Positions 223-27,300 of a DNA stretch of 64,000 nt are shown in pieces. Both the position numbers and the translations under genes were made by a program. The DNA lies in the NCBI GenBank assembly GCA_037379345.1, contig CM074512.1:25916001-25980000 (forward strand), written 5' to 3'. The stretch is from Perna viridis (lineage: Eukaryota). The notes under the pieces are model-generated. The model worked only from the letters and a program-made list of their open reading frames with translations. It ran no database searches and had not been told where the DNA came from. The first letter of the stretch is position 1; every line of letters begins with the position of its first letter.

Positions 223-370
223 GGGTGATGAAGACCATATTAATAACTATGTTAAACCAGAGTTATTGAAGAAGATAATGACCACCTATCCACATGAGTT
301 TAAGAATGATGATCTTGCTAGGAACCAATGTAGAGACAGAATTGTAGCAAGTGTACTCTACTCTATCAGG
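223..370 (+). CDS. TRPS exon (first in window, MHR region)
   Basis: ag/..../gtaagt; GDEDHINNYVKPELLKK...SVLYSIR. Confidence 0.8.
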
Positions 371-3300: not shown

Positions 3301-6300
3301 TTATGGTGTATCCATCAGCACCATGAAAACTGATTTATTCAACGGGTCATAGTTTTCCTTCCCTTGTTTGTCTACCCCGGACTTGACTTTTTATGAACAA
3401 CTCGGCGGGTGTTTCTAGAAAAGCAGAGGACGCTTACCCTACTGGTGCACCTGGTCCATGCTACCAATTTTTAGTGGAGTCCGAGTTGCTCATTTGCTTT
3501 TGTTACTTTGTATGTGTGATTTTGGTTGCTTTGTGTTCTTTGTTGTGTGAGTCTGTTTTCCATGTCTGGTCTTTGTCCCTGGATTACATTCTTTTGATTA
3601 CCACTGTAACCTTGGTTCGCTTGATTACTCTTTATGTACTGTGAAAGAAAATAGTTAAAATGACATAAAAATGTAAGAGAATTTTTAGTGCTAAGTACAA
3701 GTGTTGTTTACAGGTCACTCCTTCTCTGTTAGACCTAGCCATGATAAAGAAAGATAGACACAAGTTTGTAGAGCTCTTCCTTGATAAAGATGCTGTAGAA
3801 TTACATAAATACTTTACTCACAAGAAGTTACTTTATCTGATCAATAACTTTGAAGACTCTGAATTCTTTAGAACAATGTGTCTTGGGGAGATGCTGGGAT
3901 ATTCACCGGTGAGTTCTATGGTATCTTCTTTTTATAAGAACTGTAAATAGAAAGACAAAATGAATAAATGGCTTACACAATAATTACTGCATGATATAAA
4001 TATGTAACAAATCACATGCACCATTTGAAAAAAATTAGTCAGTAACCAATAATCACAGAGTCATGAAACTGGTAATTTAACCATTTAAAATAATTTGGGA
4101 ATATCAGACTGAAAAAAATAATACAATATAGAAATTTATCTTTGAAAAGATTTAAAAATCTCAATTTAAACTACTTGTCCTCTGCCAAGACTGTTCTACT
4201 TAGAGTTGAAAAAAAAAATAAATTCAAGTACAATGTAGTAACTTCAAGTTTTGTAGTCTTTATATTCTACTTTGATTTCAACTTCAGTGACAACTTGAAT
4301 AAATATTGGTTCACTCTAATTTTTCTGAAATAAAATAGAGGTTTGTGATCAATGTTTCATTAAATTAATATTTAAATAATGATGCAGATTTCAGATTACC
4401 CAGTTGGTAAGAGGTTTGTAAATGGGGAAAGATCTGATTTCAACAAACTTCTGTACAAAGCCACCCACATGTCTGGTTTAGGTACCTTCACAGATGTTGA
4501 CAAACTAGAGACCACAGATATCAATGTAGCTACACTAGCTATAGCAGAAAGGAAGGTAATGTTTTTCATTATTTTTCTCTTTCATGCTTGATATTCCTTT
4601 ATTTATGGCTGTCTATTTCAAATAAGATGTAAAGTAAATCAATTTAGTTTTACATACATATTTCAGACATTATTTTGTCTGCTTTATAATGGATTTCTTG
4701 GAATTCTGCTTTTTTTCAAATCCTGGATTAACCATTTATGTTTTTTCTTCTTTTATATTTACTGTGGGTTTCAGCAATATCTGCCTTTTTGTTGGCTTTG
4801 TAAAATCATGTCTGGTATTTACTGTGAAAGTATTTTTGCTTGTGGGATATCAATTTTCGTAGTTTTCATGGGTTTGCTAAACCATGAAATTTGATGCCCA
4901 AAGGAAAAGAAAATATCCCATTTGTTTATATTGTAAAAGTGTCAAATCCATGAATTCAAGAATCTACGAACTGATGGTTTTCCCCTAAACTACGAATATT
5001 AGTACCCATGAATTAAAGTACTTCCACAGTAAGCAATTTTTGATGTCTCAATTGAAGTTCAAATATATATCTGTGAAAGTACTCATCTAAATATGTTTGA
5101 TTTTTTTCATCTTGATTGAGTTTATATACTTATATACTTAAAACAGTGGGGGAACATTTAAAAAAAAACAAAGTAGGAATGTTGTTGATTCAGACTCCTA
5201 GGAGATACCATGAAAATGACTGTCAGATTATTTTTTTTCTTTGTATTGTATTTAATAAACTCAATTAAATTGTGTAAGTGTTTCATGGTGTTGTATTATG
5301 TTCATTTTATTTTTATAGACAATAAAATGTTTAAGTAGAGTGTTTTTTTTTGTGTGATTATCTTGCACCATGTGTATTTCATTCTGCTGACTAAAAATGT
5401 GCCTGACCTGGCTAGATGATGCCAAGAAATATCCCAGAAATTTTTCAATTATCAAACCATAAATATAATAACCGTGAATTCTGAAACTAATTACTAATAA
5501 CTTAACATAAAAGAATGGATAAGAATATACTTGATACAAGAAAATATCATCCTCCTTGACAGACTATGCTGTACTCAATACCTCGTAAATTAATATACCA
5601 TCTCACATGCTAATATTTTACTGTCCAGGTAAAGTATACCTATATAAAGACTTAGCATGAATAATACAACAATTAAACACCGGCAAACATTTACTGTAAT
5701 TGTACTTATTTCCACGAATTTTGCTGCCATGCACTGTCCGCAAAAATAAGTACATATGAAAGAAATTTCTACCTTTATTCTTTACACAAAAACCACACTT
5801 TTTCTGAAAATAAGTACAGTTACTGTTATTTGACATATTGTAATGAACCATTTCTTGTTTTATTTAGGCCATAAACATATTAGTTTTTTGGGCAGCATTA
5901 AATTATGATACAGAATTAACCAAGACTCTGTGGAAAAAGACAGAGGAGCCCATGGCTATGTCAATGATTGTCAGCATGCTGTGGCATAATATGGCAAAAA
6001 GATGGTGTCCTGATGTTGACCTTAAGAGAAGACTCTTGAAATCTTCAAGGTATTATTTTCATGAGAGTTTATGAAATACCTATAAAGTATTATGAAATGT
6101 GACTTATTTAGTTATCTGTTGTGATTTACTTTATCATTGGTTGATTAGATCACAGTATCACTTAAATATTTTTGATATGGACTTGGTATTTCTATTCTAC
6201 TGAAAAGTCACTTTGAAACATGACTATGTTTGTTGTAACTTCCTTTAAAATAGAAACTTCAGGTCTGTATAATATTTATACCCCCCTTTATTAGGGAGTG

Positions 6301-9300
6301 GGCTGTCTTGTCCATCCCTCAGCTTCTATTGGAGGTAATGCTTATTTGGTTTATTGATTTTGCTATTTACAGTGTCTCCACATTCCAGGATACTTACTTA
6401 TCCTCTTTCTGTTTATCATACAACTTAGTAATTTATAGGTGATGCATAGTGGATTTTTTTTCTAAACAGATTTCTCAGCTTCTACTGGAGGTACTATTTA
6501 GATATTTGGTACACCACTTTAACCAAGTCTCCCCCTTTGAAGTTTTTTGCATATCTTATTCCTATTTACCGTGCAACTTAATAACTGTAATAAATTCATT
6601 TTTGGTAATGGTATACATGGTATACATATATTATAATAGTTGTTTAATGCATTCTTAGCATGATTTAGCATGCAACATCGTGTTACTATATAAAGATCAA
6701 CAGATCCATATTATAGTAAATCAATATGTCAATCGTCGTATGAAGTTAAGTACAGGCTGGTTAAAGTGATGTCAGAATTAAGTAATTTCTTGATATATTT
6801 CATTTAGTAGGCCATTTTTGTCAGATTTTTGGACTCCTCTGGTTTTATCCATTTCATAGCATTAATATTTTTTGCCTAGTGACACACAGTTTTCTTAACA
6901 TAATTTCATTAAAAACACCTTAAAATGTTATTTGGGAAGTTTCCTGAAATTCTTGTTACTCCTTCAGTGTTTTAATCAATTAAACCTACTAAGCCAAAAC
7001 CTATGGTAAATCAAAGAATCTTTTTCCCTCCAAAATTTCAAAAGCTTGTATCTAAAAAAAAACAGCAACAATGACCCATCTGGTTTTTTTTCTTATATCA
7101 TTCTAGCATGAAAGATCAGAAAATATTTCACAATCTTTTGAAATCCTTGCTATTTTGATGAAGTTTTTAAGAGGTAATCTGGTAAATGTCATATGTAGAT
7201 GTGCTGTATCTTATGCCTGCAAATGGGGATATTCCATCTTGAAGGTATTACATGTTAAAACTTTTGAAGTGCAGACTGTTATGGATTTTGAGGAAATTTA
7301 TATTGGGAGACTAGGTATTGTATGTAGATGTGCATGAAGGAAGATAACTATTGTCTGATGTCTGTAAAACAAGATAATCCAACATGAGGGTTTTACTTGT
7401 TTTAAAGTTTTGTTAGCACAAACGATATTAAACCCCCTAAACTTTGTATAAATTTTATTGGAAGGTTAGGCATCATATATAGATGTGCACGAAGGGGGAT
7501 AACTATTATCCAATGCCTTCAAAGGCATCAAAACCAAGTGACCTGTTTAAACCTGATAAGTGCAACTCCTTCTGAACAACCATATGGATTTTGTTGAAAT
7601 CTTACTGACTGGATAGGCATCATATGTTGATGTGCTTGAGGGAAAATATTAATTGCCTGATATCTGCAAAAGGAAAGAATCCAACTTAAAAGATTTGATA
7701 TGATTTTAGTCCAATTGAATCAGTGTAAATTCTACTTGTGAGCTTGATCACCGTCTATTTAGTTTATGTTCTTTATTATCACTCATAGCTATTTTTATTT
7801 AGGGAGTTTGGTGAGCTTGCTGTAAAATTGCTGGATTACAGTTACAAAGATTCTAATATAAACACCATAGCTTTGCTTGACAAGAAGCTTGGAGACTTCA
7901 ACAACAAAACCATTGTAGAGCTGGCTCATTTTGCAAAGAACAGACATTTTATTGCCCACTATATCTGTCAGAAATGGCTCAATAGGCGATGGTTTGGAAA
8001 TTTGCTGATCAAAAAGTATGACTGGGGACCTATTAAGATCCCTAACTGGGTGAAGGTAAGCCTTTTCATTTGGCCCTATGTTTGTTTCATTATGTGCTTG
8101 TATAGAAGATTGCTGATTATACCCCCACTCAACAAGGTGGTGGTAAATTGGAAGCATTCTGTCTATCCATCATTCAGCCCCGCCAAAGTTCGTTGCAATT
8201 ATCATCACAGTTTCTAATAAAATGATTGATTTTAAATTTAGTGTGTGGCTTTATGTAGATGGGGCATATGTTGTAAGCCATTTTGGGTGCTTTCATATAT
8301 CAACTTCCAGTTTCATAGAATATTGCCATTTTTTATAACAGTATATGGAATGATAAAAATCGTTTTGGAGTTAAATGGGTACATGGGCCATGCCCTAAAA
8401 TATCAACTTTTTTTTTTTGCCAAATTTTGAAAATTACATTTTTTTATTGGATTCTTTATAAAAATCCCTGCATAGGAATTGAATATATTTAAAGGGATCA
8501 ATTTTTATGGTTTCAAAAAATGATTAGCATTATATAGTGTTAAAATTCAATTTTTCAGGGTCTTTTTTTTCACACATCTCTGCCCGTGGAGAAAAAAATG
8601 AAACTGCTGCACGTTAACTTTTATATCTATAGAAATATGGTGAGATTGCCATTTTGCCAGAATCTTTCAGGCTTAAATAGCACCAGGATCATTGTGTATT
8701 ATTGAAAGAGGATATATAAAGAACACATCATTAACTGCAACTCATTGTATCAAAGAAACCACTTTTGACAAAGAATAATGTTTGGTTGTTTAATTTTTTA
8801 ACCTGCTGAAATGGTTCTTGTACTTAAAAAAGAAAGAAAAAGTAAGAGCAATGTAATGTGAAAATGATATTCCTTGACAACATATTTTGACATGTAAACA
8901 ATATTCTAAAGTAATCCATTTCCAGAGTTATATTTGTTTTATATTCTTGCAGATATACATGAGTTTGATGCTAATCTTTCCTATGTTTATTTGGATTGAT
9001 TATGATTTGGCTGACAGGAAGAGAAGGAGGAAGATAATTGAAGGTAAATTATTTATGACTATTGTAAATAACAGGTGTCAGTAAATAAAGTGATATGTGT
9101 TAATTTATTGTTTTGGTTTGGTTGCCATGTGTACCCATAACTATTGATTCCTGTACATGTAATTTATAATGTAGAGTTGTGTGCTGTTTTAGAATACCCA
9201 GTAATTCTTTGTTAACACATTCAGCAAGTTTGACTTTCCTTTAACAACCTGATAATTGTTATAAAAAGTGGTTGAAATAATTTCCCAAGTAATTTAAATC

Positions 9301-12300: not shown

Positions 12301-15300
12301 TGGTCTTGATAAAAATTCCTGCAGTTTTTTAAGAGTTATTCCCCTTATTGGATAAAGAATCCGAGAGGAATTTTGAAATTCTACTTATAATATCACCTAC
12401 TGTTGGATTTTTGTATGATATATTCCAGCAAATTACTATAAAACTATCTTCTGTTGTTGGGATCAGTTTGAAGAGAGGGTCAACAAAATGTGCTTTGCTT
12501 CACTGGCAATGCCTTTCTTATATTAAATACTTAACTAAGATTAGACATTTAAAAAAAAAAACAAATCTTATACTCACAGACAGAACAGATAAAATGTGGA
12601 CTATTCTTGGACCACAATATTCGGTAGATAAATCGTGTAATTAAAAAGAATCAATTTATTATTAGCTTGAGTACCTGTTTCAGATCCCCACAATCATGCT
12701 GAAGATAATGCTGTTACTAATGAGGAACATCGTAGTTTGATTAATTACTATAATCATAGAGGTAGCTCAGTAATTCTCCTCCTGCTAGGCCATTTCTTAA
12801 TCAGTAGTTATGACAAATCTTTTTTCTTTCAGAATTAAATTGTTTTAACTTGTAAGCTAGCAAGAATGTATCAATAAACTTGTCATTGAATGTACATGTA
12901 CTTGGATAACCATACAAGATTATGATATCATGGATAACGAGCTTGGGTGTTTGGGCAAAAGAGTTTGGCCAAAATTTCAATAGTAGAGTCATATCAGTAT
13001 ATTTTGCTATACTAATTAAAGATGTCGTCCAATAAGCCAGATTTTTATGCAGTATTAATGTGATTCAATGTGTTTAAATGGATTATTACATTAAGTACAT
13101 GTATTGAGGTAAATGTTGCTGAGCTTGTTTTTGAGTGAATTGTAAGCATTCAGATTATTATTTCCCTTTCTATTTCTTTGGTGTATATAAACATCTTCAT
13201 TGATTCGATCTTGCATGTTGATTATTTGTTATATTATTCACCATATGGAATACTCAGAATTTATTGATGCTGGTACTTTATAACCATCAGCTTTTTGCTA
13301 GCTGAAAAGATGCTGAAAAGTGATATATTGAGCTTTCTGTTCTGGGATATGCTTAAGCCTGCTACTAGAATATTATGTGAAGACCAATTATTTTTTTTTT
13401 TCTAGTATGTAATTTTTTTCCTACTTGATCAAAAGCTGTTACTGATTGACTTATTAATCATCAACTTGTAATAATATTACATTGAGCATAAATGCATTTA
13501 CTGGTTTGACAGATTTAATTTGTAAAATTTATTCAGATATGTCTATTTTAAAAGCATCTTTTGCAACATCTTTTAAATGAAATATGCAAGTAGTAAATGG
13601 TTAATCTTAATGCTTTCTTTATTGCTGGACTTGTTTTCTCCATTAAACAATTAGACAAGTATGATGGATATATTATATATTATCTGCCAAGTTGCTAAAT
13701 TATTAACCCTTTATCATACCTACGAAGGTGCAGTGCTGTAATTCAGTGTTGTCATATATTATAATCTATAAGCCACTGCAGTTTATTAATTCCATTTTAA
13801 TTGCTTAATAAAAATAGATTTTACACAACTGTGCATGTTTAGTCCATTCTAGCTTGAGAACAGTTAAATGCTTAGTGCTATCATTATATCATTAGAGAAT
13901 AACCAGAATTAAAATGATTTTAATAAGACTGGTTCTTTCTCTTGCCATGAAGTAGATATAATTCCTTGAATTTTGTTTGTAGATGACCTAGAAGAACAAA
14001 AGACTGATTCTTATCCTTCAAAGTACACCCCTGTGTTTGTTGATGATTGGGTAGGTTAAAAGACTTCTTGCTGCCAGTTAGATATTATTTTTGTTGACAA
14101 TTTATCTGCGCTTATTTTGAGAAATGTATAAAAACAACATGAAAATAAAATGTTGCAAATAAGGCCCCTTATTATGGAAAACAAGGTCAAGAGAGTGTTT
14201 GTTGGGAAGTTGAAGATTGAATTGATATCATGAAATGTGGAAATAAGTATCATTGAAAATGAGTTCGTTTTCAGTAGTTACACTGTGATAGTCAATGAAT
14301 CGAGGGCAATACAGCTTATTGTAGGCATCAATATTTTTACAGTATGGTAGAGTTGTAACACACACAACACAAAGTTTTAGATGATGTAACCAACAAAAAT
14401 CATTTCATTTCAATTATACATAGTGTCAGGTTTTATTATTAGACAAATGATGAAATTATGATAAAATAATAGGTATGTAGCTGTTTGTCTGTTTGATTTT
14501 TTTTATATGGATTTTATTTCACACAAAGTGACATGGTATTATAAAATTAGTATTATTACTAAATTGTCCAACAGATGCTCAATTTTTTGGGTGTGTAGAA
14601 AATTATAGATTAAATTTTGATTTGTCACGGTATTACATGTATATTTACCTCAGATTGTAAAGCCATCATCCACTATGATGTATAAGATGAAGAATGTATG
14701 GCATTACAGTAAAGAGAGATTTAAGGTTCCTATTCACCTACAATTTTACTACCTGTGGAGTGCACCTATTACTAAGTTTTGGCTCAACCAGGTAAGGAAA
14801 CATCTTTCAAGGTACTGTTATATGAAGTAAAATGAATATGCAGTCTACAAAGTCCATTTATACAAAATCAGATAAAGATTAGGTCAAGGCAGATAGATTT
14901 TAAAAAATACCTTCTTTCAAGATGCATCTGCATTTAATCCCTGATTTGTCACTGTGACTTTTGATCAGACTGAATCAAATTCTTAGTGATCTGTATGTCC
15001 TGAGTGGAGCAATGTTACAATAACAGTGTTCTTTGATAGTGAGTTTTGAATACTGTGAATTTTAGTAATAATTGTGATGTACTAGTATACATAACTGTTG
15101 AGTTATCATTGAGTTTTTTATGCTATATGTAAACTGACGTTATTGTCCCCCCCGACACCTCTTTTTTTGTACTGCTCCTACCAAAGAAGTTTGTTTTTGG
15201 CATGTAGTCTTATTAAGAAGAATTACAGAATAAGTTCGACTCTAGTTATGGTTGAATGATTTTTACAGAAGTTATGGCCCTTGGACTTAGAAAATTTCAG

Positions 15301-18300
15301 TGAATTTATAGTTACAGTTTTGTAATGCTTTTACCAATTTTTGTAATAAATTACTTGTATAACATCATGTTTTTTCAAATATTCATATATATATATAGCC
15401 TTGTTTAGTGTTATTGTAACATTACATGGACACTGATAAGGAAGGCGATTTGTTGGTTGAAATATTTATTTTTATGTGGGGCACAAATTTGGAACCCTGT
15501 TCTTTTTTTGATTTTTTTTTAGATAACTGAAAAGTTATTTTTCTAGTTATCTAAGAAATTCAAATTGCATATCAGGCTAAATTGACAAATTTACAATAAC
15601 TAGTGTAAGCAATACTTTTGAGTACTTTTACTACATTTAGTTATTAAACATTTACAATCTCATGCTCTGAAAATCCCCTGTTATAAAGTAAAAAGATTTC
15701 TAGGTTACCGCATTGTATCATAAAAAATCTGGTTCACTCTGAAAAATTTGCTACAATGTAAACCTTGGTTAGTTTGTCTGGACTAACTTCTTCAGTTCCC
15801 ACTTCTCTTAAGGGCAGTCCATATTTATATTTTTTCTTTGCCAAAAATAAAAATGTCAGTGTCAGTTGATTTATAAAGAAATCAAGCCAGTTACATATTC
15901 TATTTGATATGATAATTTACATGGTATGTGTTTAATGTTTTGACAGCTGAAAGAATTCTATTGTTGAGTCAACAGTTAATTTAAGATATCTTTTAACATA
16001 TAACAGTAGTATTATTTGAATTTGGAATTATTTTGGATTTAAGAAAATAAGTGAAATAATTAAATATGAACCTTACCCTTCTAAGGGGGTTAGTCATGCC
16101 ATCATGATCAAGGGGGGTTAGTAAGTTTCCTTGATTTTTGTTATCCTACTAACCCTACCTCTTAGCCATGCCGGCATGACTAACCCACTTAGTAAGGTTT
16201 ACTTTTACAAATTTATTTTTGGTCATTTTCTTAATTCCAAAATAATTCCTAATTCAAACAATACCTTGTTTAATGCATTCAACTTAGAGAAATTCATTGA
16301 CATGATGTCATTTGAGGTCACACGTGGTCTTGGTGATTCTACCTGTATGGTCACGTGTTCTTGGGGACAACATTTTTATTCCTTTTGTTTTGTCACGTGT
16401 GTTCTTGATGACAGCATTTTTATTCCACTTGTATGTTCACACTGGGACCTGAGGTAACTAATCCAAATAACTTTGCATTATAATTGTTTAACCTTAGTTC
16501 ACCCTACTCCAGTTTCAGATATTTACATTATCCAAATTTAGTCCTGATTTTGCAAAGTATTAAAAGGGTATCAAGAAATACAATATCTAAGGTTCAATAA
16601 AGAACTATTGAATCCAAGGTTTAACGCTGCATAGTTTCATTGCACATATTTATGATTTTAGATATTCTACATAGTATTCCTGATCTTGTTCAGTTTAGCA
16701 ACACTATGGCCCTATTGTGGTAGTTTGAAGCTGGATATGGCAGTGTTTGGATGGACTCTGATGATCTGGACAGAACTTGTCAGAACAACGATTGTGAAGT
16801 GGAAGGTACATACAGATGTGCTGATCTTACTTCTGTCAACAGACTCACATTTTTTTTACTGTTTTTCCCATGTATCTTGTTAACTACATGAGATGAATTA
16901 TAAGTGTTAGAAAATTAAAATTATTATCAAAATTTTATTGTCCATATCACTGTAAGTTTTTGTGTGAAATTAACATGTCTTATGTGTTTTTGTTATTGGT
17001 TTTTCAGATATCTCAGAAATGGTGAATCAGATAAATAACTGAAGTATAAAAATTCGTCCATGAAATTCCTTAAATCCTCATGGATTTGTGAAAATTTAGT
17101 TGTTATTTATCTCTCAGTAGACTTACAACACAATAACATAGCCATATAACATCTTTTTTTTTTTTTACATGATTATGGAAGGTGAGCGACTCAGGGGTAT
17201 AATGAATTGCATGATTATGGTAAGGTGAGCGACTCAGGGGTCTAATGAATCACATGATTGTGGTAAGGTGAGTGACTCAGGGCTCTAATGAATCGCTGTC
17301 TATCATAAATGATTGGATAGGAACTATTTAAAGAATTCAAATGCAAGTATTTTCAGCAAGTTTGTTATACTGGCATATTCTACAGTTGTATTACTTTACT
17401 GAAATGATTGCATATTTAGTTCTTTCAGTTATTATAATAGAATTGTTCCTGTATGATTTCAGAAATACAGAGAATTGGATTTGTTCTGGACTGTAATAGA
17501 GATATTTGTAATGTTTTTCCTCATCATAGTAGTATTTACAGCCAGGATACCACAGTACTTCAAGCCATTCTTTACTTATCTCACTACCAAGTTTATCATG
17601 AGCTGTGGACTTATCTACTTCTATTACCGAGTTCTGGTGGTATTTCTGCCAATCAGTTCTATTTTGGGTCCTATGATTATTAGCATCAGAAGGATGGCAA
17701 GTTTTTTTATGCTTACATAAACGTGCTACAATAAACTAAAGAATATTTACATGTTTTATTGACTTATTGACCTAATATCTTTTTTGGTTTAATCTTCAAT
17801 ATTCTGAGTCCAACACTATCAGTAAGCATTTTTGGTTAATTACTCATTTTATGAACCTTTAAAGCAGATTTTTTTTTTAATATAAACAAATTGGAATTGC
17901 CACGATGTTATTGCCATGATTTTTGTTCAGAATTCAGCTTTCATATTTTCAGCTGGTTTTCTTTATTCATATATTTTGTTCTTGTAGTTTGTATTGAGTA
18001 GGATTAGCTTTAAGGGTTTGTTTTGTAAATTTTTGCTAGAAATTTAGTAAAGATTGTATCCTTTACAGATAAAGCATGATTTTCTGACCTGGTTTAGAAT
18101 GTTTATAATTATTATGGTGTCAGGAGCCATTGCTATTCAGGCAGTATTGTACCCAAACTATCCACTGATTCCTGAAGCTATCAGGGTATCATTTTCCAGG
18201 GCATTCTTTGCCATGTTCCTAACAAAGATCGATGACTTGGAAGGTATGTAGGCCTAATATGGTAAATCAAAGCAAAAAAATAGTTAGATTATTATCCAAA

Positions 18301-21300
18301 ACTTGAACAAACACCAGAAAAAAAATAAGGAACTAGAAAGAAAAATTGAAAGACTCTATATTAAAATATAATCTTTCAGCTAAGCAAAACTTGGATAATG
18401 AAGTAAGTGCACTCGTAGGGTAAGCATGTGCTTTTAGAGACACCCACTCAGTTGTATATGATGCGCTTAATTAAATACTGAGTAAAAAAAGTCTGTGGTA
18501 AGAATATTAAGTCAACCCAATAACACATATATGGTCAAAGATGTACTCAAGTTATCATGTACATGAGTAAAAGGAAGTAATTTGTCTATATTTTTGTTTC
18601 AAATTAAATGATATAAAATCATCTGTCATCTTTACTGATAATTATATCTGAAAAAAAGTTTTTTTTTGACATTTTCCTTTTCATTTATATCAACTGATTA
18701 TATATGGAGAAGTAATCAAAATTTCTTCATTATGATTGGTGTTGAATTGGTATACTTTAATAGAATCATATTGCATTTCAAATCTTCAAAAAAATTAATT
18801 TTTATAACCTGTTTCCATTGAAAAGTATGTACATCTTTCCAGGAGCTGAATGTTCTTCTATGTATAACAATGTTACAGTTATTGATCGTTGTTATGGTGA
18901 GTGTCATTATATTTTCATATTATAGATATACTGTTAATTCTAAAACTATTGATATGATAATTTGTTAAATGGATTGTAATCACACTAATTAAAACTTACA
19001 TAATGGAAGCTACTATTTTTTAAGATTTTCCTAAAGCGTTTAAAAAATCTTTATGAATTTTGGTGTGTGACTTTATGAAGATGGGGCATATGTTGAAAGC
19101 TATTTTAGGTGCTGTCTGCTATGAACTTCCTATTTTTTAGGACTTTGCCATTTTTCACTGTATGGAACGATAAGAAAATCTTTGTCACAAAAATCTCAGC
19201 TCCCAAAAAATAGATTGTTTTCAAATTTGGTTTGTTGAATTAAATAATGGGGCATACTTTGTAAGGTATTTTGGGTGCTATCCAGTATCAAGTGAGTATA
19301 CACCTAACATTATAGTATGACTTGCAGGTTTATGTTTAATGTACCTTTTGTTTGCAGAGAGGAGGGAGCCTTTGAAGTCACTGTTCAGAAGAACAAATGA
19401 ATCAATATTTTGTAAGTATAAATGTCAGAGCTTCTAAATAAATGATACTTTGTGTCAGAAATGGCATTATTATTATTTTCATTTGCAGATTTCACTGTTT
19501 ACTTTTTAAAATTGTTAATAATTTTCTAGCTTCCAATATTTTTCCTGTTTGGCTCTTCTATGATGGGGCCTTAAATTGTTTGTAGTTGCCATAAAGATTG
19601 TTCTGTAACTTAGTAATTTTTTTACTGTTTTCTCTTCAAATTTGTCCTGAATCTGGAAGCAGTTTTCTAGAAATGAATTTCCAGTGGAGCCAGCAGACAA
19701 CCCATCACATTTTGTACACACTTTAATCATTGAAGACTACATGTTATTTAAGCAAATTCCAAAATGTATGACACACTCAGTGAAAACTAAAAAATATTGA
19801 CTGGCCTTTCCTCATTCACCAAAATTCAGTTTTGTTAAAATTCTAAAGGATTGACATACAATGAGCTCATAGATGTAGGCTATATAAAACATCACATGAC
19901 TCATACTGGCTAAAGGGTGCCTCAGGGATGTGCATGATAGGGAATTTATTTCCTAAGAGTTGCAACTGATGTCAAATTACCATGGCTTATCATCTAAGGT
20001 GATATCACACTCTTCTTTACAGCTAAAGATGAGTTATCTAAGTGTCCTTACAGTAGTTTAGGAGGATATTTTGTAGTCATACAGTACCTGCTCATTGTCA
20101 AGTTGATATTGGTCACTCTATTGTTTGCATTGTTCAGGTATGTATGAGACTATTTAGTGACTTAATTTGTATCTTTTATTTCTTTGGTGTTTCTTTTTTA
20201 ATAGACAGATATTAATTTGTTTTGAGAAGTCAATTGGAATATTTTTATGTGAGATTGCAAGGATCTTTGAGAATTGGATACAAAACCAATGATGTCATAT
20301 ACAAAGAATGCATAATATAAGGATTTCTGTAGAAACAGGTTGTTAGATATTGGTTAGAATCTGTTTTGCAAACAGTTGATAAGTGTATGTACACCCAGTC
20401 TCAATAGACTGAATATTAAATTGCATATCAGGGGCTCAAATTTCTTTAAACTTTATATATTGCAACAGTAGAAATATGTTACAGTAATAATTGCTCAAAA
20501 AGATTTTATATTTATTCACCCTTTCAATATTATTACCAAAGAATTATAAATTTTACTTTTATTACACTATCTTGAAATATGATATGACTATGATACTGAC
20601 TCTTTACTTGATATATCCAGATACAAAGTTTATATAGGAACCCCCTTCTAAAAGAAACCCTGAATGATTCAATGGAATTTTATGAAACTTTATTGGAAGG
20701 TTTGGCATCATATATTAGATGTGCATGAAGTAAAATAATGATTGCCAGATGCCTTGAAAAAGGGAGAATCCAACTAAAGGGTATAACATGTTGTAAGTGG
20801 GTTTCTACTTGGCTCACTAACCCCCTCCTTACAAATTATAGTTCTGATTTGTTTATGAGTGTATTACATTTATTGTAATTTAATCACATTAGAATATTAT
20901 CTTTTTTCTCAGCTTATTCATATTTACCAATGCATATAATGGAAAAAACTGCCTTTTTTTATTTCGTGGGTACAATGTAACAGTTCCCTGTACTATTTCT
21001 CAAATGAAGGTTTTGATTTTCTGAATTTCTTTCAACAGTCGTACAACAGCCAATGTTGAAGAAGAATCAGAAGCAATTTACAAGTTTCAGAAATATAGTT
21101 TGATTGTGGACTTCGAGGAGAAATTAATAATGCCACCTCCACTTAATATCATAAGCTACACTATGATGATATTCCAGAACCTCTTCAAGTATCTCTGTTG
21201 TCTGTTTAAGAAGTGTAAAAATTGCTCCCACTGCTGCAGAAGAGATGATTCTGTGGTAGGTTTGACAGGTGTGGTACGAAAAGAACAAGAGAAGTAATAA

Positions 21301-24300
21301 CAAGAGTCTTAGGAATGGATTAGTAGGGAAACTTTAAAAGGATGCTGATAAAGGATAATTATTTTAACTGCATAAACATATTTTAAATATTAACATTCTT
21401 TTTCATCATTGAAATGAGAACTACACTGAATGATAAGTTAGTTCCAAGGCTTTTAGATCTTTATTTGTCATCTACATCTCTAGGTTATAAATATCTCAGT
21501 TATCATTGTAGATTTGTATATTTCTGAAAGGTCAATTATTTGTGATATCCTTGTCTCTAGTAAAAAATATCAGAAGGCACTAGACAGCTGTATTTTGCAG
21601 GATGGGGCAAGAAAAGTTTCTATAATGATGATGCAATATTCAGAGGACTATAGCTACTGGGGCAACTTTGTTAAAAAGTTGGATTATGATGAACATGAAC
21701 AAGAGAAAGAAAAGGACAGAGCTAAAATAGAAAGTGAAAAGTAAGTCATCTTGATAATATAAATTTCAGGTGCTAAGTATTAGGCAAAAATTATGTATTG
21801 TTAGCAATTCCTATGCTATTTGATGTATCATTTTTAATTTATTAGTGAGCACCACAAAGCAGTGTGAGCTGTACGGTTATTACATGTACTATCTAATTTT
21901 CCTTAAGGTTCCTCAATATACATTGTACTAAAGAAAAAAAAGTCAGGTCCTGGAAGTAACAAAAAGTGACTTTCCTTATGGAGAAAATTCAATGTTTCCT
22001 TAAATCAAACTAACAAAAATATAAAGGTTAAGATTACATTCAGTAAAAATTAACTTAATCTTTTCTGATAGTTTTCGAGTTTTGGATGTACGTATGTATC
22101 GATGCTGTTCTACTGTTACTCTTGTCAAGAACCTAACATGCCTTGGAAAAAATATATTGTAATATCCAAATCGACGAATAGCTTTTCTGTAATAGGAATG
22201 ACAATTATTTTCTTTTTGAAATTGGCAGAGCTCTGTCAGTTGCATCTGAATTTTGTTTATGTCACGATATGTGTAAGAATAATCAAAGGAACCAAGATTC
22301 TAGCGGAAATCAAAAGAATGTTATCCAGGGACAAAGACCAGACATGGAAAACAGACAAACACAACAAAGAACATAAGATAACAAAAATAATATATACAAA
22401 GTAACAAAAGTAAATGAGCAATTCTGACTCCACTTAAAACTGGGAGCATGGACCAGGTGTACCAGTAGGGTAAGCTTCCTCTGTTTTTCTAGAAACATCT
22501 GCAGAGTTGCTCATGTCTGGGGTGAACAAAAGAGGAAAGGATAACTACGACAGGTTGAACAAATCAGTTATAAAATATTCCCACCATCTGCCTACAACTG
22601 TAATATTTCCAATATCTGTATAAATTAATCTGACCTGCTACAACAGAAAAGGATGTTTCTAGTGATGTCCTTAAGGGTTAAAAATTTTAAAGCATGGCAA
22701 AGTGAGACAAATTTATCCACCATTTTGAAAGCGAGGGAAAAGGAGGAATATGACTGGGATTTTGGAAAAACTTTTCTCTAATTTTGCTTCAATTTTCATA
22801 CCGCTTGACCGATGTGGAAAAAGATGTTCTCATCACTAGTGACTTTTTTGTTCTCAGAGTTTGATTGGCTTAGAAATGGATTGTCTTGGACTCCATCTAG
22901 AATCGCCATAATTGCCATTGTAGTTATCTTTCAGTTAAATGAGATAGTTTGGTGTTTTCTTTCCTTAAATAAGAATTATGATGGGACTGGGGAAGATTTG
23001 AAGTGAAAAAACATTTGAAATCGTCTGGTTTCCTTTGTTTGGAATGTTTGCCTTTGTGTGATGTCAACATGTTTCCTATGAATCGGAATCATAACATTTT
23101 GCACGCTTTTCATTTTTGGATATTTTTGACGTGTTTTGGGCATTAGAGAGATAGTTAAACAGTTAAAAAAGTTTTAGCATTTTTATAGCCCAACGTGAGG
23201 GGTATATAGGGATAGGGATGTCTTTTCATCCTTCTTTCCTTCCTTTGCACTGTTACACAGAGGGGGACCCATGTCTTATCCAATACTCCTCCTAAACTTA
23301 TTGAAACTTTCACAGAATCTTTATTACAATTTCCCATTGTTTCCCTTTTATTTAAGATTGTGATCCATATCAATTAAGGGGTTCCACATGGTAAAACATG
23401 AACTTTGTCATTTATGAATATGGGAACATGGTGGAGACCTATCTCTTCTGTCATCTTCCTACATAGCCAAGTGAAATTTTATGAAACTTCACAGAATCAT
23501 TTACAACTTCCCCTTAAGTGCTCAAGGGATTTTGATGAAATTCTATAGCAATGGTAGATATCATATATAGATGTGCATGAAGAGTCATAATTACTGTTGG
23601 AGGACTCCAAAGGGAGATATCCAAATTAAGGGTTTTACATGTTAAAACCTTGTTAGTGCAACTCCTCCATAACTGCTCAAGGGATTTAGTTGAAATTTAT
23701 AGGAAGGTTGGGTATTGTTTGGAGATATGTTGAAGGAATATAATTACTGTTGGAGGACTCCATACATGATAAAACCTCGTAAGTACAACTCCTCTTAAAA
23801 GTTCTCTATGGATTTTAAAGTAATTTTACAGGAAGGTCTGGTATCATATGTAGATGTGCATGAAGGTGTATAATTATTGTTGGATGACCAACAATTTATT
23901 TTAAAGTCTATTTGAAACAGGGGTTGTTCTCTTTGTGAGCACAGTATTTCTTGTCTGTTATGTTATAATATGTAAATTGCCATATTCACTCTGTCTTATG
24001 GTCTCAGATAAATGACCTTGCACTCAAAATTTGAATTTCTATCAGAGTAATACCAAGCTGAAATCAAAGCTTGTACCCTTGGCATTCTGTAAAGATTTTT
24101 TGGAATGAAACTTGGTTGACAAAAAGATTTTTCTAAGACTTTTTCAACTTATCTCCCCTGATATAATTTAATTTCTTAATGAGGTGCTTTTATAGTAGTA
24201 CATGTAATTGACAGGGCTATTCTGGGAACAATTTAGTGACAATCTAAATACAGACTTAAAGTGCAGCATTTACGATTATGAATAGTACATATTTGGCCTA

Positions 24301-27300
24301 AAATTTATGATTACATACAGTATATATCATGCAAGTAATAAAACTGAAAAAAAAAATGATTTAAAAAAAAAAATTTGTTTCTACCCACTTTGTGTTTCTT
24401 TCCTATTGTCTTAGTTTCCTATGTATTTACTAACATTATCCTTTTGCTTTTTCTCTACAACATCTAGTCTTTTTCAGTGTCTATCTGAAGCTCTGATTTT
24501 TCAATGTAATTTTTTCCCATAGGTTGGACAGTCTAATTGCCCAGTTTGCATTAGAAAGAAAACATAATGGTAAAATGGTTGAGCAAATCTCTAGCTTAGA
24601 AACAAATGTTGCTAACTGTCAGATAGCTTTAGAAGAACTGAAGCATATGATAGAGAAAATTAGTGAGTAAATATTACTGGTGGTATTTTTATTGTTCCAC
24701 CATGATTTAGATATGTAAAATTTTACTCTGCATACTGTAAAAAAAATGCCCAAAATAAAGCTAAATTGAAAGTGTCTTATAATCAAAACTATAATTGTAC
24801 TGTTTAACCAAAAATTTTGTGACAATCAATTTTTTTTGTTATTTTGCAATGACGAAGACTCCACAAAAATATGGTGAAATATGATTACAATTTATTTTTA
24901 CCTTAGAAGCTTGTGATCAGTAACTAAGTCCCCAAGTAACCCTTGTACAATCACAATCATGATCAATATTGTATAACCACAAGTAGTCAACTATTTGCAT
25001 TCAAATTTTAAAATTTGATGTCAGTGCACCTAAGGCAAGCATGTCTTGAACTCTGATGAGTCATTTAGTTGATATAAAATATTGGACTCTCCTTGCTTGT
25101 TGGCCAGATTGGTTTTGAGTTTATTAGATCAAGATTGCATATTACACTCAGGTAGTTTTTGACAGAATGACAGCCTTTAATTTGTTTGTATGCTTTCTTT
25201 CAGAGGGAAAATTAGTATTTTATTAGTATTTTAAAAATATAAAAAGGAATATAACATTCCATACATTGAACATACTGAAGCAGCTTACAACTAATGATCA
25301 ATATGAATTTTAGATCCACACTTACAGCCAGCATTAACTTCAGAAGAGAAAATGATACATATACTCAGTAGAAGATCTCCTTACCCAGAAACAGTAGTCG
25401 CTAGGTTTTCTGTTTTTGACAAATATGTGCCTTGGGAGGTAATTGCATTTGTTAATTTGTAGATAAAAATTGTAATAGGAACTTTTCCTAAAACCCACAA
25501 TTGAATGTTTATTCATTGTCACTTTTAAAAAAAATATTTGCATAGCAGCAAAAATTTATGAACTGCTATGAATGAATCCATCTTTCAAATGTGTAAGCAT
25601 AAATCAGTAATTTAATTTCAGATGTTTCCTTTTTAAAAAAGATCTTTACTCTTTTTAATCCACCTTTCAATATACCCTCTAACTAAGTGATGTGGGAATC
25701 CTTTGCCTGTCTGTGAAACTACTCAAAAACCTATCGAATATGAGGGTTCAACATTATACCAGTAGGATTTGGTTTGACAGATGCTTTGTATGGAAGATAA
25801 TCATATTTAAATACAGGTATTTTATATGTCACACTCAGGTTTATCACTCAATTAGCTTACTCAGTTCTAGATAAAAAAGGACTTCCAATGTAACATTTGG
25901 ATAGTTTCAAATTAGATTTTTTTCATATTTATATTTGTATATAGGAATCAACCCATTTGTCTGTTTGTCCGTCTGTCCCCATATTGTGCTAGCACAAATC
26001 CTCCTAAACTGCTCAAGGGATTTTGATGTAATTTTATAGGACTGTTGGGCATCATATGTAGATAGTTGCTGTCTGATGATGTGAGAGGGAGATAATTCAA
26101 CTCAAGGCTTTTACATGTTTTAACTTGTCTGCACAACTGCTCCTTAACCATGCAAGGAGTTTTGTTGAAATTTTCTTTGAAAGGTGGGCATTGTATGTAG
26201 ATGTGCATAAAGGATTGTAGTTACTGTTCGATGACTAGAAAGGGAGATTATCCAACTTATAGAGTTTTACATGTTAAAACCTCGTCAACACAACTTAAGG
26301 GATTTATTATGAAATTTTGTAGGAAGGTTTTGCATCATATATAGATGTAGATGAAGAAAAATAATTATAGTGTGAGGACTCCAAATGGATATACAAGGAT
26401 ATATAATTGAACTTATGAGTTATGTAACTTCATTTGAAGTGCGGGTACTGTAGGTAATGTCAGAGGACTCTAAAGCAAGTTAATTGAGCTTAAGTGTTAT
26501 ACATTTTACTTTCTACTTTATAATTAGTATCGTATATATATGTTGTATTGTCTTTTTTTCCAATCTGAGCAGACACCATACAGTACCTATGACCCAGTGA
26601 TTTACACATGTCCTGTTGATCAGTATCCTTCAGAAACTCAGCCATTTGTTGATCCAGATTTTCTTAAGTAAGTCTATTATCACTTAAAAATAATAATAAA
26701 ATGGGGACAAAATACAGTATAACACATGAAGAAGGGGCTTAAAATCTTTATTATATAACCATAACTTAGAAATAATCTAAACAATCAATAACTATACCTA
26801 ATGAAAATGTTAGCATATAAAATCTGTGTTGTTTTGTGTGTGTGTGTGTGTTTTTTTTTTTTTTCATTTTTGTCCATGGCTTTAATATATGCCTATGTTT
26901 AAAGTGAGCTGTAAAGGGTGATCAGGCTCTCTGGATGTTCTTTTATATACTTCTCTCTTCCTTTAACTGTTGGATTTTTGTGAAAATTTCGGGACTTCAG
27001 GACTTGACTATTACTTAATACTGCTGTTTACCTTCTATTTCAATTTATAGTTCCAATCAGCGAGTGAATGGTATATTGACATCACCTTGTCTGTCCATCT
27101 TTTGGTCTGTCATTCCCTCCATCCTAATTTTGGCTCAATTATCTCAGCTCCCAATAGATGAATTGATTACAAACTTGTTTTGTGGCTTTATATTGGTGGA
27201 GAATAACTTGTAAGCGAATTTGGTTGTGTCAAATATTAAATTCTTGTACAAGTAGGAGTATACCTAGCATTTCAATGTGTGTAACTTCATGTTTATTTTA

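What the first reader, a model, noticed from the sequence alone, without database searches (positions are those of the whole stretch)
14654..21255. Channel looks like a TRPS (soromelastatin/CED-11) member rather than a canonical TRPM2
Seen: S1-S2 loop WPYCGS, S5 end AIAIQAVLYP, filter FAMFLTKIDDL and S6 VIQYLLIVKLILVTLLFALFS. Known: TRPM channels have a YGE/FGQ-type filter and S6 xNILLxNLLIAMF. As I recall, C. elegans CED-11 has PGCGS, AVAIQAVVFP, FSLFTTDL and VIEYFVILKLLL..LFAFFS, which fit these features. Inference: this is a lophotrochozoan TRPS, a family with little functional characterisation that pipelines would likely label TRPM2-like.
Basis: partly seen in the sequence, partly recalled or inferred. 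Interest (0 to 1): 0.75.

Follow-up and report, generated by a model that had tools for sequence, protein, structure and literature searches.

The report
Bivalve TRPS (CED-11-like) channel gene

Summary
The gene is on the + strand. It starts about 8.3 kb upstream of the window and ends at 30906, with 26 coding exons in the window.

Spliced contigs from four runs of four studies confirm all eight junctions laid. They include one GC-AG intron and a 54-nt pore-loop exon that I had missed.

In an ML tree of the S1-TRP region, each of six window exons, entered as its own row, falls beside a Mytilus "TRPM member-like 2" protein. All lie on the side that holds C. elegans CED-11, split 100/100 from 9 TRPM rows. 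Forcing them to join the NUDT9H-bearing TRPM rows costs 213 lnL (p-AU 7e-6).

The four core transmembrane exons score 27-33 bits against a nematode CED-11 profile and -3 to 5 against a TRPM profile.

SLOG, MHR and NUDT9H parts are present, and the Nudix box is degenerate.

So it is a TRPS. Molluscan TRPS, with two paralogues and TRPM mislabels, was published in 2020 and 2026, so this is a new member of a known kind. Function is inferred only.

The parts
223..370 (+). coding exon (MHR region), first exon inside the window; the gene's SLOG exons lie upstream of the window
   Evidence: tblastn to P0186; AG/GT borders and phase; the 3' border is set by length agreement with other TRPS proteins
1525..1618 (+). 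coding exon (MHR)
2001..2131 (+). coding exon (MHR)
3714..3908 (+). coding exon (MHR3/4; Pfam TRPM2-like domain PF25508, E 3.7e-5)
4388..4555 (+). coding exon (MHR)
5868..6049 (+). coding exon (MHR)
7803..8055 (+). coding exon (MHR4 to pre-S1 linker); the only part here that finds solved TRPM structures by plain sequence search (TRPM3, E 8.5e-11)
8953..9043 (+). coding exon (linker)
13983..14050 (+). coding exon (linker, ...PVFVDDW)
14654..14791 (+). coding exon: pre-S1 helix (SAPITKFW)
   Evidence: its 3' junction to 16662 is seen as a loose end of a spliced contig
16662..16805 (+). coding exon: S1, S1-S2 loop with P-x-C-G (WPYCGS), S2
   Evidence: spliced contigs in 4 of 4 runs
17463..17696 (+). 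coding exon: S3-S4; followed by a GC-AG intron (GCAAGT donor)
18069..18243 (+). coding exon: S4-S5 linker end, S5 (AIAIQAVLYP), pore helix and filter stretch FAMFLTKIDDLE
18843..18896 (+). coding exon: pore turret, part 1 (AECSSMYNNVTVIDRCY)
19358..19411 (+). coding exon: pore turret, part 2 (RREPLKSLFRRTNESIF); not in my first model, found only through the spliced contigs
20023..20137 (+). coding exon: end of turret (KCPYSS) and S6 (VIQYLLIVKLILVTLLFALF)
21039..21255 (+). coding exon: TRP helix (box reads YKFQKY, Y in place of the usual W), PPPL stretch, Cys-rich tail
21601..21740 (+). coding exon (post-TRP)
   Evidence: (loose end at 21256)
24523..24662 (+). coding exon (helical stretch that I read as a coiled coil, by inference only)
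25314..25438 (+). coding exon: start of the NUDT9-homology region (SPYPET...KYVPWE)
26573..26667 (+). coding exon (NUDT9H)
28187..28378 (+). coding exon (NUDT9H)
28887..29076 (+). coding exon (NUDT9H core, NPMGRTGIRGKG...WGPNH); hits nvTRPM2 at 9.4e-10, human TRPM2 at 3e-9 and NUDT9 at 2.8e-7
29525..29644 (+). coding exon at the place of the Nudix box; degenerate (GGDYGYMTVYSAVCQKFLTVTAED), with no PDB match at E<=10
29783..29929 (+). coding exon (NUDT9H, YRGYFDDQYNTDNAW); hits NUDT9 at 1.3e-5
30805..30906 (+). last coding exon, with the stop codon at 30904-30906

Best explanation
The window holds most of an intact, transcribed gene for a TRPS (TRP soromelastatin, CED-11-like) channel subunit of a bivalve mollusc. 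It is the counterpart of Mytilus galloprovincialis 'TRPM member-like 2' (P0186). It belongs to the molluscan TRPS paralogue clade that also holds the Pecten 'TRPM1-like' protein, the oyster proteins and gastropod proteins.

Shown:
- Architecture: SLOG and MHR at the N-terminus, six TM segments with a pore loop, a TRP helix, a helical stretch, and a C-terminal NUDT9-homology domain.
- A model of a gastropod relative (not of this protein) matches solved TRPM2 structures best.

Inferred: it works as a tetrameric TRPM2-like channel. Its cytosolic SLOG/MHR and catalytically dead NUDT9H parts would serve as ligand (nucleotide or ADP-ribose type) sensors rather than enzymes.

Its pore differs from every characterised TRPM:
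- At the TRPM filter (Y/F)-G-E it reads F-L-T, followed by K-I-D-D.
- S6 carries a family-wide lysine.
- S6 has T where TRPM has the N of NLLIA.
- In this lineage the TRP-box W is Y.

Selectivity and gating therefore cannot be carried over from TRPM2. By analogy with C. elegans CED-11 (known to me here only from a paper title) it may take part in cell-volume decrease of dying cells. This last step is speculation.
For: Identity and relatives:
- The best relative is P0186 (67.8% over 1220 residues).
- The next are Pecten, oyster, gastropod and octopus proteins, then chelicerate, myriapod, tardigrade, amphioxus and nematode CED-11 proteins.

Trees:
- 43 rows x 551 columns: TRPM (9) | rest (34, including 6 nematode CED-11 orthologues) at 100/100.
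- 50 rows x 347 columns of the S1-TRP region, with C. elegans CED-11 (P0266) and 6 window exons as separate rows: the same split at 100/100, and all 6 exon rows beside P0186 inside a 16-row molluscan set (96/99) (without P0266).

AU tests:
- Window + Mytilus held with the two NUDT9H-bearing TRPM rows: lnL -213, p 7e-6.
- Held with all 9 TRPM rows: lnL -26, p 0.023.

Per-exon profile scores:
- S1S2, S3S4, S5P and S6 score 27.6, 27.4, 33.4 and 30.0 bits against a nematode-only CED-11 profile.
- The same four score -2.6, 5.3, 4.5 and 2.9 bits against the TRPM profile.
- Summed over 24 exon pieces: TRPM 157, nematode CED-11 269, other non-mollusc TRPS 744.

C. elegans CED-11 itself hits the window by tblastn: S5-pore (9e-6), S6 (5e-4), TRP (6e-8) and MHR4 (3e-8) exons.

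Diagnostic columns:
- G of the filter: 9 of 9 TRPM rows, 0 of 34 TRPS rows.
- N of S6: 9 of 9 TRPM rows, 0 of 33 TRPS rows.
- The window exons read as TRPS at both columns.

Domains:
- SLOG (PF18139) in 3 of 4 upstream exons tested, and PF25508 in 2 window exons.
- NUDT9H exons hit nvTRPM2, human TRPM2 and NUDT9.

Expression and gene model:
- Contigs of 4 of 4 runs (4 studies) skip the introns at exactly the modelled borders.
- All 25 junction phases fit and no exon holds a stop.

Fold:
- AF2 model of the Physella TRPS P0152: pLDDT 81.5, with a pore helix ending just before L-T-E-I-S-D-L.
- Foldseek: all of the about 45 rows shown are TRPM2 or TRPM3 structures.
Against: - My TRPM sample is small: 9 rows, 7 of them alpha-like and 2 with NUDT9H. 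It has no vertebrate TRPM2/4/5/8, no TRPM-gamma or beta-like rows, and no TRPC/TRPN outgroup. The tree therefore shows a bipartition, not a rooted sister relation.
- The loose AU test is only p 0.023.
- Two exons score higher against the TRPM profile than against the nematode CED-11 profile: MHR4 67.1 v 58.0 and TRP 38.6 v 30.9. The non-nematode TRPS profile beats both (95.4 and 62.0).
- Window exons entered the tree as short rows (10-22% of columns filled). They share no columns with each other, so their order among themselves means nothing.
- The runs are only guessed to be RNA, and contigs say nothing about expression level or tissue.
- The fold is of a relative, not of this protein.
- The alignment across the pore is weak. 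HMMER leaves profile positions 987-1053 unaligned to nvTRPM2, so the column-by-column filter comparison could be off by a residue.
- No function of any TRPS was measured here, and the library searches found none.
Confidence: 0.9

Rival explanations
1. It is a canonical TRPM2-like (TRPM-beta) channel, as an annotation pipeline would name it, with a somewhat divergent pore.
For: It has the TRPM2 architecture, including NUDT9H. The TRPS profile's best solved relatives are nvTRPM2 (E 1.2e-199) and human TRPM2. Foldseek's top hits are TRPM2 chanzyme and TRPM2. NCBI names of relatives say TRPM2-like.
Against: Holding the gene with the two NUDT9H-bearing TRPM rows costs 213 lnL, p-AU 7e-6. The TRPM | TRPS split is 100/100. 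The TM exons score -2.6 to 5.3 bits against the TRPM profile. They find no solved TRPM at a significant E-value. Filter G and S6 N are absent.
Confidence: 0.01
2. It belongs to one of the TRPM clades described in 2026 (TRPM-gamma or TRPM-beta-like), which I could not sample, rather than to TRPS.
For: Those clades exist in molluscs (PMC13143021, passages), and none of their members is knowingly in my tree.
Against: The gene sits in one 100/100 group with C. elegans CED-11. That group also holds a Pecten 'TRPM1-like' and a 'TRPM7-like' protein, labels that the 2026 paper says it reassigns to TRPS. I matched them by name and species only, because the accession table is a closed supplement. The paper states that gamma and beta-like lost NUDT9H, and this gene has it.
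Confidence: 0.02
3. TRPS is not a separate family but a fast-evolving offshoot of TRPM drawn together by long-branch attraction, so 'TRPS' here would be a label without evolutionary meaning.
For: The nematode CED-11 stem is long (1.7-1.9 changes per column). Amphioxus and acanthocephalan rows are long, and treekit warns that long branches meet. I had no outgroup.
Against: Molluscan, chelicerate and myriapod TRPS branches are not long (0.2-0.8). They share invariant TRPS-only residues with nematodes: P-x-C-G, two turret cysteines, the S6 lysine. Himmel et al. tested and rejected long-branch attraction (PMC7306681, passages). Two later papers recover TRPS as sister to TRPM (PMC9242649; PMC13143021).
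Confidence: 0.04
4. The locus is a decaying or non-functional copy.
For: The TRP-box W, a residue conserved in 31 of 33 TRPS rows and 9 of 9 TRPM rows, is Y here. The Nudix box is degenerate.
Against: 26 exons have no stop and all 25 junction phases are consistent. Spliced contigs occur in 4 of 4 runs from 4 studies, with at most one differing letter (most pieces none) in the long contigs that carry the seven exons laid, S1S2 to TRP. The W-to-Y change is shared with Mytilus, so it is old. The degenerate Nudix box is reported as family-wide (PMC13143021).
Confidence: 0.02

Closest known systems
C. elegans CED-11 (P34641), founding member of TRPS / TRP soromelastatin
   Same: Same side of the 100/100 split from TRPM. 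Shared S1-S2 loop P-x-C-G, S5 end A(V/I)AIQAV, filter stretch without glycine (LSLFTTDL v FAMFLTKIDDL), S6 lysine and LFA(L/F)F(S) ending, and NUDT9H remnants.
   Different: Only about 20% identity overall for the Mytilus counterpart. S6 has P in nematodes where the window has T. The TRP box is W in C. elegans and Y here. The nematode branch is very long. The window protein keeps a clearer SLOG and NUDT9H.
Mytilus galloprovincialis 'TRPM member-like 2 isoform X1' (P0186), with the Pecten maximus 'TRPM1-like' (P0184) and oyster proteins (P0015, P0181): molluscan TRPS paralogue clade
   Same: 67.8% identity over 1220 residues to P0186. Same exon-level matches from MHR to the last NUDT9H exon, the same FAMFLTKIDDLEG filter stretch, and the same Y in the TRP box as Mytilus.
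   Different: Shorter pore turret than the Mytilus model. Lacks about 10 residues that the Mytilus model carries after the first window exon. It is a different species.
TRPM2 (nvTRPM2 6co7, human TRPM2 6mix/6puo, choanoflagellate TRPM2 chanzyme 8sr7)
   Same: Overall architecture and fold: SLOG/MHR, 6TM, TRP helix, NUDT9H. These are the best solved relatives by profile and by fold of a TRPS relative.
   Different: A different family by tree. The pore stretch cannot be aligned by HMMER. No filter G, no S6 N. The S3 N of the TRPM Ca2+ site is T and the S2 E/Q pair is not matched in my alignment (the naming of these sites is recalled). The Nudix box is degenerate.

Membership tests
TRPS (TRP soromelastatin, CED-11-like) | Groups with C. 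elegans CED-11 and apart from TRPM in a phylogeny (the family is defined phylogenetically: PMC7306681) | tested here: met
   TRPM (9) | rest at 100/100, with C. elegans CED-11 and all 6 window exon rows on the same side; the TRPM2-like placement is rejected, p-AU 7e-6. Caveat: no outgroup, 9 TRPM rows only.
TRPS (TRP soromelastatin, CED-11-like) | N-terminal SLOG / melastatin region (PMC7306681, PMC13143021) | tested here: met
   PF18139 in 3 of 4 upstream exons (E 4.4e-10, 1.8e-6, 0.0027) and PF25508 in 2 window exons. The SLOG exons lie outside the window, in L004, L007 and L009.
TRPS (TRP soromelastatin, CED-11-like) | C-terminal NUDT9-homology (Nudix) domain retained | tested here: met
   exons 28887-29076 and 29783-29929 hit nvTRPM2, human TRPM2 and NUDT9 (E 9.4e-10 to 1.3e-5).
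TRPS (TRP soromelastatin, CED-11-like) | NUDT9H residues needed for ADP-ribose hydrolysis not conserved (PMC13143021) | tested here: met
   The exon at the Nudix-box place (29525-29644) has no PDB match at E<=10, while both flanking exons do. Its sequence shows no R-E...E-E. The Nudix consensus itself is recalled, and the paper's Figure S6 could not be seen.
TRPS (TRP soromelastatin, CED-11-like) | No ankyrin repeats and no alpha-kinase domain | tested here: met
   No ankyrin or kinase family among the Pfam hits of the 16 exon pieces scanned, nor in the precomputed Pfam lists of the TRPS relatives. Not every exon was scanned.
TRPS (TRP soromelastatin, CED-11-like) | TRP box 1 as in TRPM, with TRP box 2 and the stretch between them divergent (PMC7306681, Fig. 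3B) | tested here: inconclusive
   The window reads YKFQKY where 31 of 33 TRPS rows and 9 of 9 TRPM rows start with W. The stretch after it (LIVDFEEKLIMPPPLNIISY) follows the TRPS rows. The paper's consensus figure is not held.
TRPS (TRP soromelastatin, CED-11-like) | No N-terminal cysteine-rich segment (PMC13143021) | not tested
   The N-terminus lies upstream of the window, and I did not examine it for this.
TRPS (TRP soromelastatin, CED-11-like) | TM signature seen in my own alignment (not a published definition): P-x-C-G in the S1-S2 loop, two invariant turret cysteines, S6 lysine, no filter G, no S6 N | tested here: met
   P840, C842, C1011 and C1056 are invariant in 25 of 25 TRPS proteins, and K1075 is present in at least 90%; the window exons carry the TRPS states.
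TRPM (canonical melastatin channels, including TRPM2) | Selectivity filter (Y/F)-G-(E/Q) and S6 N-L-L-I-A | tested here: not met
   9 of 9 TRPM rows have both. The window reads F-L-T and T-L-L-F-A.
TRPM (canonical melastatin channels, including TRPM2) | Placement inside a TRPM clade | tested here: not met

The most novel reading that the evidence does not exclude
The TRPS pore is not a TRPM-type Ca2+-permeable cation pore at all. It has no filter glycine, a threonine at the E/Q position followed here by a lysine, a family-wide lysine inside S6, no S6 asparagine and, in this mussel-like lineage, tyrosine for the TRP-helix tryptophan. The channel could therefore have a selectivity or gating mode unlike any characterised TRP, for example a monovalent or anion path suited to shrinking cells. 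The dead NUDT9H would act as a pure ligand sensor.
Probability: 0.15. Interest if true: 0.6.

Novelty: new member of a known kind. Interest (0 to 1): 0.2.

Why it matters
It settles the name of one gene. It adds one well-supported exon model, confirmed by spliced contigs, to a family that pipelines still label inconsistently.

The family itself remains an open problem:
- The 60 solved structures shown of 109 matched are all TRPM, so no TRPS entry is visible in my search.
- The library searches found no recordings of any TRPS (two reviews, listing only).
- A 2026 review calls such clades worth exploring (PMC12923046, passage).

A compact, clearly expressed bivalve TRPS with intact SLOG and NUDT9H is a reasonable candidate for a first functional or structural study. 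That is a practical point, not a discovery.

Tried and rejected
- Pfam on six open-frame pieces of the TM region gave no channel family: 0 of 6, with only unrelated hits at E 0.08 or above.
- Plain phmmer of the S5-pore piece against the PDB gave one unrelated chain at E 0.46. The S3-S4 exon gave only nvTRPM2 at E 0.37. These blanks reflect divergence, not absence of a channel.
- The representative search with the MHR4 exon returned mostly single-exon fragments. It found no full-length protein of the window's own species: the best full-length hit was 52% identical in that exon.
- None of the three word-indexed searches listed a window-encoded protein, so I had no ready spliced protein for this gene.
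- My first model joined the turret exon 18843-18896 directly to the S6 exon, which is in frame. The spliced contigs showed a further 54-nt exon, so that model was wrong.
- I first read the filter by eye as L-T-K against Y-G-E. The column table shows F-L-T against Y-G-E, and the report uses the latter.
- I considered a read-through end for the first window exon near 400, suggested by the Mytilus model. I rejected it because four other TRPS proteins lack those residues and a GTAAGT donor sits at 371.
- Driscoll et al. 2017 on CED-11 is not held. I know only its title, from a reference list.
- Supplements are closed, so Table S1 and Figure S6 of PMC13143021 and the supplementary trees of PMC7306681 were not seen. 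My matching of P0184, P0020 and P0189 to the proteins those papers call TRPS is by species and label only.
Every exon was translated and used on its own, and the fold was made for a database relative instead.

Full report
WHAT IS THERE

The window is AT-rich (GC 0.28-0.35) animal DNA with short exons and long introns. The last residue of the S6 string arises from a codon split over a splice junction.

tblastn with database relatives mapped the gene exon by exon. It occupies window 223-30906 on the + strand. Searching the window's own genome (window = G000:C2:25916001-25980000) put the N-terminal exons up to about 8.3 kb upstream of the window. Those exons were read.

Inside the window I count 26 coding exons, 3712 coding bases in all. 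There are 24 GT-AG introns and one GC-AG intron, no exon holds a stop, and all 25 junction phases fit.

IS IT EXPRESSED AND CORRECTLY MODELLED

- A word search found 17 runs that hold 12-15% of the words of 14654-21255. That is about the share that the exons make up of the stretch. Three further runs hold 65-98% of the words and are most likely genomic.
- I laid the contigs of four of the 17 runs, from four studies, on 15300-21290.
- In 4 of 4 runs a contig skips 16806-17462, 17697-18068 (GC...AG), 18244-18842, 19412-20022 and 20138-21038.
- The same contigs carry a 54-nt exon at 19358-19411 that my homology model had missed. One run differs by two letters at the left border of that exon.
- Loose ends give the junctions 14791|16662 and 21255|21601.
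- The long contigs carrying these exons differ from the window by at most one letter, and most pieces by none.
- The runs are only guessed to be RNA, but intron-less contigs are what RNA gives. Contigs say nothing about level or tissue.

WHAT FAMILY: SEQUENCE SEARCHES

Single transmembrane exons find nothing in Pfam or among solved structures. The MHR4 exon finds 52 distinct solved sequences at E<=1, all TRPM (TRPM3 at 8.5e-11).

A full HMMER scan of 1.84 billion representatives with that exon gave 224 hits at E<=0.001. The full-length hits that match the window best by tblastn carry the following names:
- Saccostrea 'TRPM member-like 2', Tegillarca, Strigamia T1IZ08, a mite, a spider, a horseshoe crab, a tardigrade, and Pecten 'TRPM7-like', whose cluster also holds an Argopecten 'protein ced-11-like'.
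- Further searches added Mytilus, Pecten 'TRPM1-like', Haliotis, Octopus, Centruroides 'protein ced-11-like' and Biomphalaria 'protein ced-11'.
- They also added nematode proteins named 'Protein ced-11' (Toxocara, Ditylenchus, Haemonchus).
- C. elegans CED-11 itself (P34641) came out of a cluster look-up.

The closest protein is Mytilus P0186, at 67.8% over 1220 residues in 22 pieces. BLAST scores of all long proteins against six references are bimodal. The TRPS-like proteins score 163-1533 bits to Mytilus or Strigamia and 47-369 to TRPM references, and the reverse holds for TRPMs.

WHAT FAMILY: TREES

Each exon was translated alone.
- A MAFFT alignment of 43 reference proteins gave a careful IQ-TREE tree over 551 columns, from MHR to the TRP helix. 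The 9 TRPM rows separate from the other 34 rows at 100/100. The six nematode CED-11 orthologues lie among the 34. Molluscs form two paralogue clades, at 100/100 each.
- I then added C. elegans CED-11 and six window exons (pre-S1, S1-S2, S3-S4, S5-pore, S6, TRP) as separate rows, over 347 columns of the S1-TRP region. The TRPM | rest split stays 100/100. All six exon rows sit beside Mytilus P0186 inside the clade of Pecten 'TRPM1-like', oysters and gastropods, a 16-row set at 96/99 (without C. elegans).
- The exon rows share no columns with each other, so only their anchoring near P0186 is meaningful.
Holding window + Mytilus with the two NUDT9H-bearing TRPM rows costs 213 lnL, p 7e-6.
- The much looser constraint, window + Mytilus next to all TRPM rows, costs 26 lnL, p 0.023.

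WHAT FAMILY: PROFILES

HMMs were built from subsets of the same alignment and scored against 24 exon pieces.
- Nematode-only CED-11 profile: 27.6, 27.4, 33.4 and 30.0 bits for S1-S2, S3-S4, S5-pore and S6.
- TRPM profile for the same four exons: -2.6, 5.3, 4.5 and 2.9 bits.
- Non-mollusc, non-nematode TRPS profile: 49.0, 56.3, 61.2 and 31.4 bits.
- Against my reading: the MHR4 and TRP exons score higher with TRPM (67.1, 38.6) than with nematode CED-11 (58.0, 30.9). Both are lower than with the other TRPS profile (95.4, 62.0).

C. elegans CED-11 hits the window directly at the MHR4, S5-pore, S6 and TRP exons (E 3e-8, 9e-6, 5e-4, 6e-8).

ANATOMY AND LIKELY WORKING

Domains, shown:
- SLOG in the upstream exons, and the TRPM2-like MHR domain in two window exons.
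- NUDT9H exons that hit nvTRPM2, human TRPM2 and NUDT9.
- The exon at the place of the Nudix box finds nothing at E<=10 and shows no R-E...E-E. This agrees with the published statement that TRPS lost the hydrolysis residues (PMC13143021, passage).

Solved relatives and fold:
- A profile of 25 TRPS proteins finds nvTRPM2 best (E 1.2e-199). All 60 sequences shown, of 109 matched, are TRPM, so no TRPS structure is visible in that copy.
- HMMER leaves the pore stretch (profile 987-1053) unaligned.
- An AF2 model of a gastropod TRPS (P0152, with 42 aligned rows, pLDDT 81.5) has six TM helices. Its pore helix ends right before L-T-E-I-S-D-L, followed by a turret with two short helices and a long S6-TRP helix.
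- Its best structural matches are TRPM2 chanzyme, TRPM2 and TRPM3.

Diagnostic columns:
- The filter G is present in 9 of 9 TRPM rows and 0 of 34 TRPS rows.
- The next column is T in 32 of 34 TRPS rows. The window reads F-L-T-K-I-D-D.
- The S6 N is present in 9 of 9 TRPM rows and 0 of 33 TRPS rows (T 26, P 6, S 1). The window has T.
- P-x-C-G in the S1-S2 loop and two turret cysteines are invariant in 25 of 25 TRPS proteins. An S6 lysine is present in at least 90%.
- The TRP-box W, one of the twelve 'fingerprint' residues of group I TRPs (PMC9242649, passage), is Y in the window, in Mytilus and in Steinernema only. The exon holding it is letter-perfect in the contigs of four runs.
- The S3 N of the TRPM Ca2+ site is T here, and the S2 E/Q pair is not matched in my alignment. 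Which residues form that site is my recollection.

Inference: a tetrameric TRPM2-like channel with regulatory, non-catalytic cytosolic nucleotide-binding parts and a pore whose selectivity cannot be predicted. A role like that of CED-11 in apoptotic cell shrinkage is a guess from a paper title.

WHAT IS KNOWN

- Himmel et al. 2020 defined TRPS around CED-11. They used a common-octopus sequence as bait and reported two TRPS paralogues in molluscs (PMC7306681, passages).
- A 2026 paper finds TRPS in cephalopods, bivalves and gastropods. It reassigns scallop 'TRPM1-like' and 'TRPM7-like', oyster 'TRPM2' and octopus 'TRPM-like2' to TRPS, and notes the dead NUDT9H and pore substitutions (PMC13143021, passages).
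- A search for 'soromelastatin' with 'patch-clamp' lists two reviews only (listing).

The classification is therefore right but not new. The gene is a new member of a known kind.

EARLIER NOTES OF THE SCAN

Two notes on the same window say that the NUDT9H domain is a pseudo-enzyme and that the pore is non-canonical. My checks agree with both. The second gave me the lead to the TRP-box Y and the S6 lysine, which I then verified.

LIMITS

- Small TRPM sample and no outgroup.
- No gamma or beta-like rows.
- Exon-wise rather than full-length placement.
- The fold is of a relative.
- Supplements were closed.
- No functional data.

Noticed in passing
G000:C6:31495749-31522831 (+) and G000:C6:31308894-31325169 (-); loci L011, L012: The same genome holds two more TRPS-like loci on another contig, about 180 kb apart and on opposite strands. 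Their MHR4 exons are 66-75% identical to Octopus and Ylistrum proteins of the other molluscan TRPS paralogue clade, and about 40% identical to the window's gene. That makes at least three TRPS genes, whereas the papers speak of two molluscan paralogues.
   Followed up: partly
window 16009-16264: A foldback element lies in the intron between the pre-S1 and S1-S2 exons. It has 40-nt arms (93% complementary, 176 nt apart) and an inner 41-nt pair. Its arms are covered by many short contigs at high word depth, with loose ends on both sides, in all four runs. It is therefore a dispersed repeat, MITE-like by my reading.
   Followed up: partly
window 17697-18068: This is the only non-GT intron of the 25 in the window. 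It is a GC-AG intron with the donor GCAAGT, and spliced contigs of 4 of 4 runs confirm it.
   Followed up: yes
window 21070-21090 (TRP box): The TRP-helix tryptophan is tyrosine here (YKFQKY). Among 42 reference rows that have data in that column, only Mytilus and the nematode Steinernema share this.
   Followed up: partly
window 371-400 compared with P0186 residues about 372-383: The Mytilus database model carries about 10 extra residues. They align to in-frame intron sequence just after the GTAAGT donor of the window's first exon, and four other TRPS proteins lack them. This looks like a retained intron piece in that model, or an alternative donor.
   Followed up: no
P0091 (Neoechinorhynchus agilis, acanthocephalan): An acanthocephalan protein falls on the TRPS side of the tree on a very long branch. 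Neither paper, in the passages I read, lists this phylum among TRPS holders.
   Followed up: no
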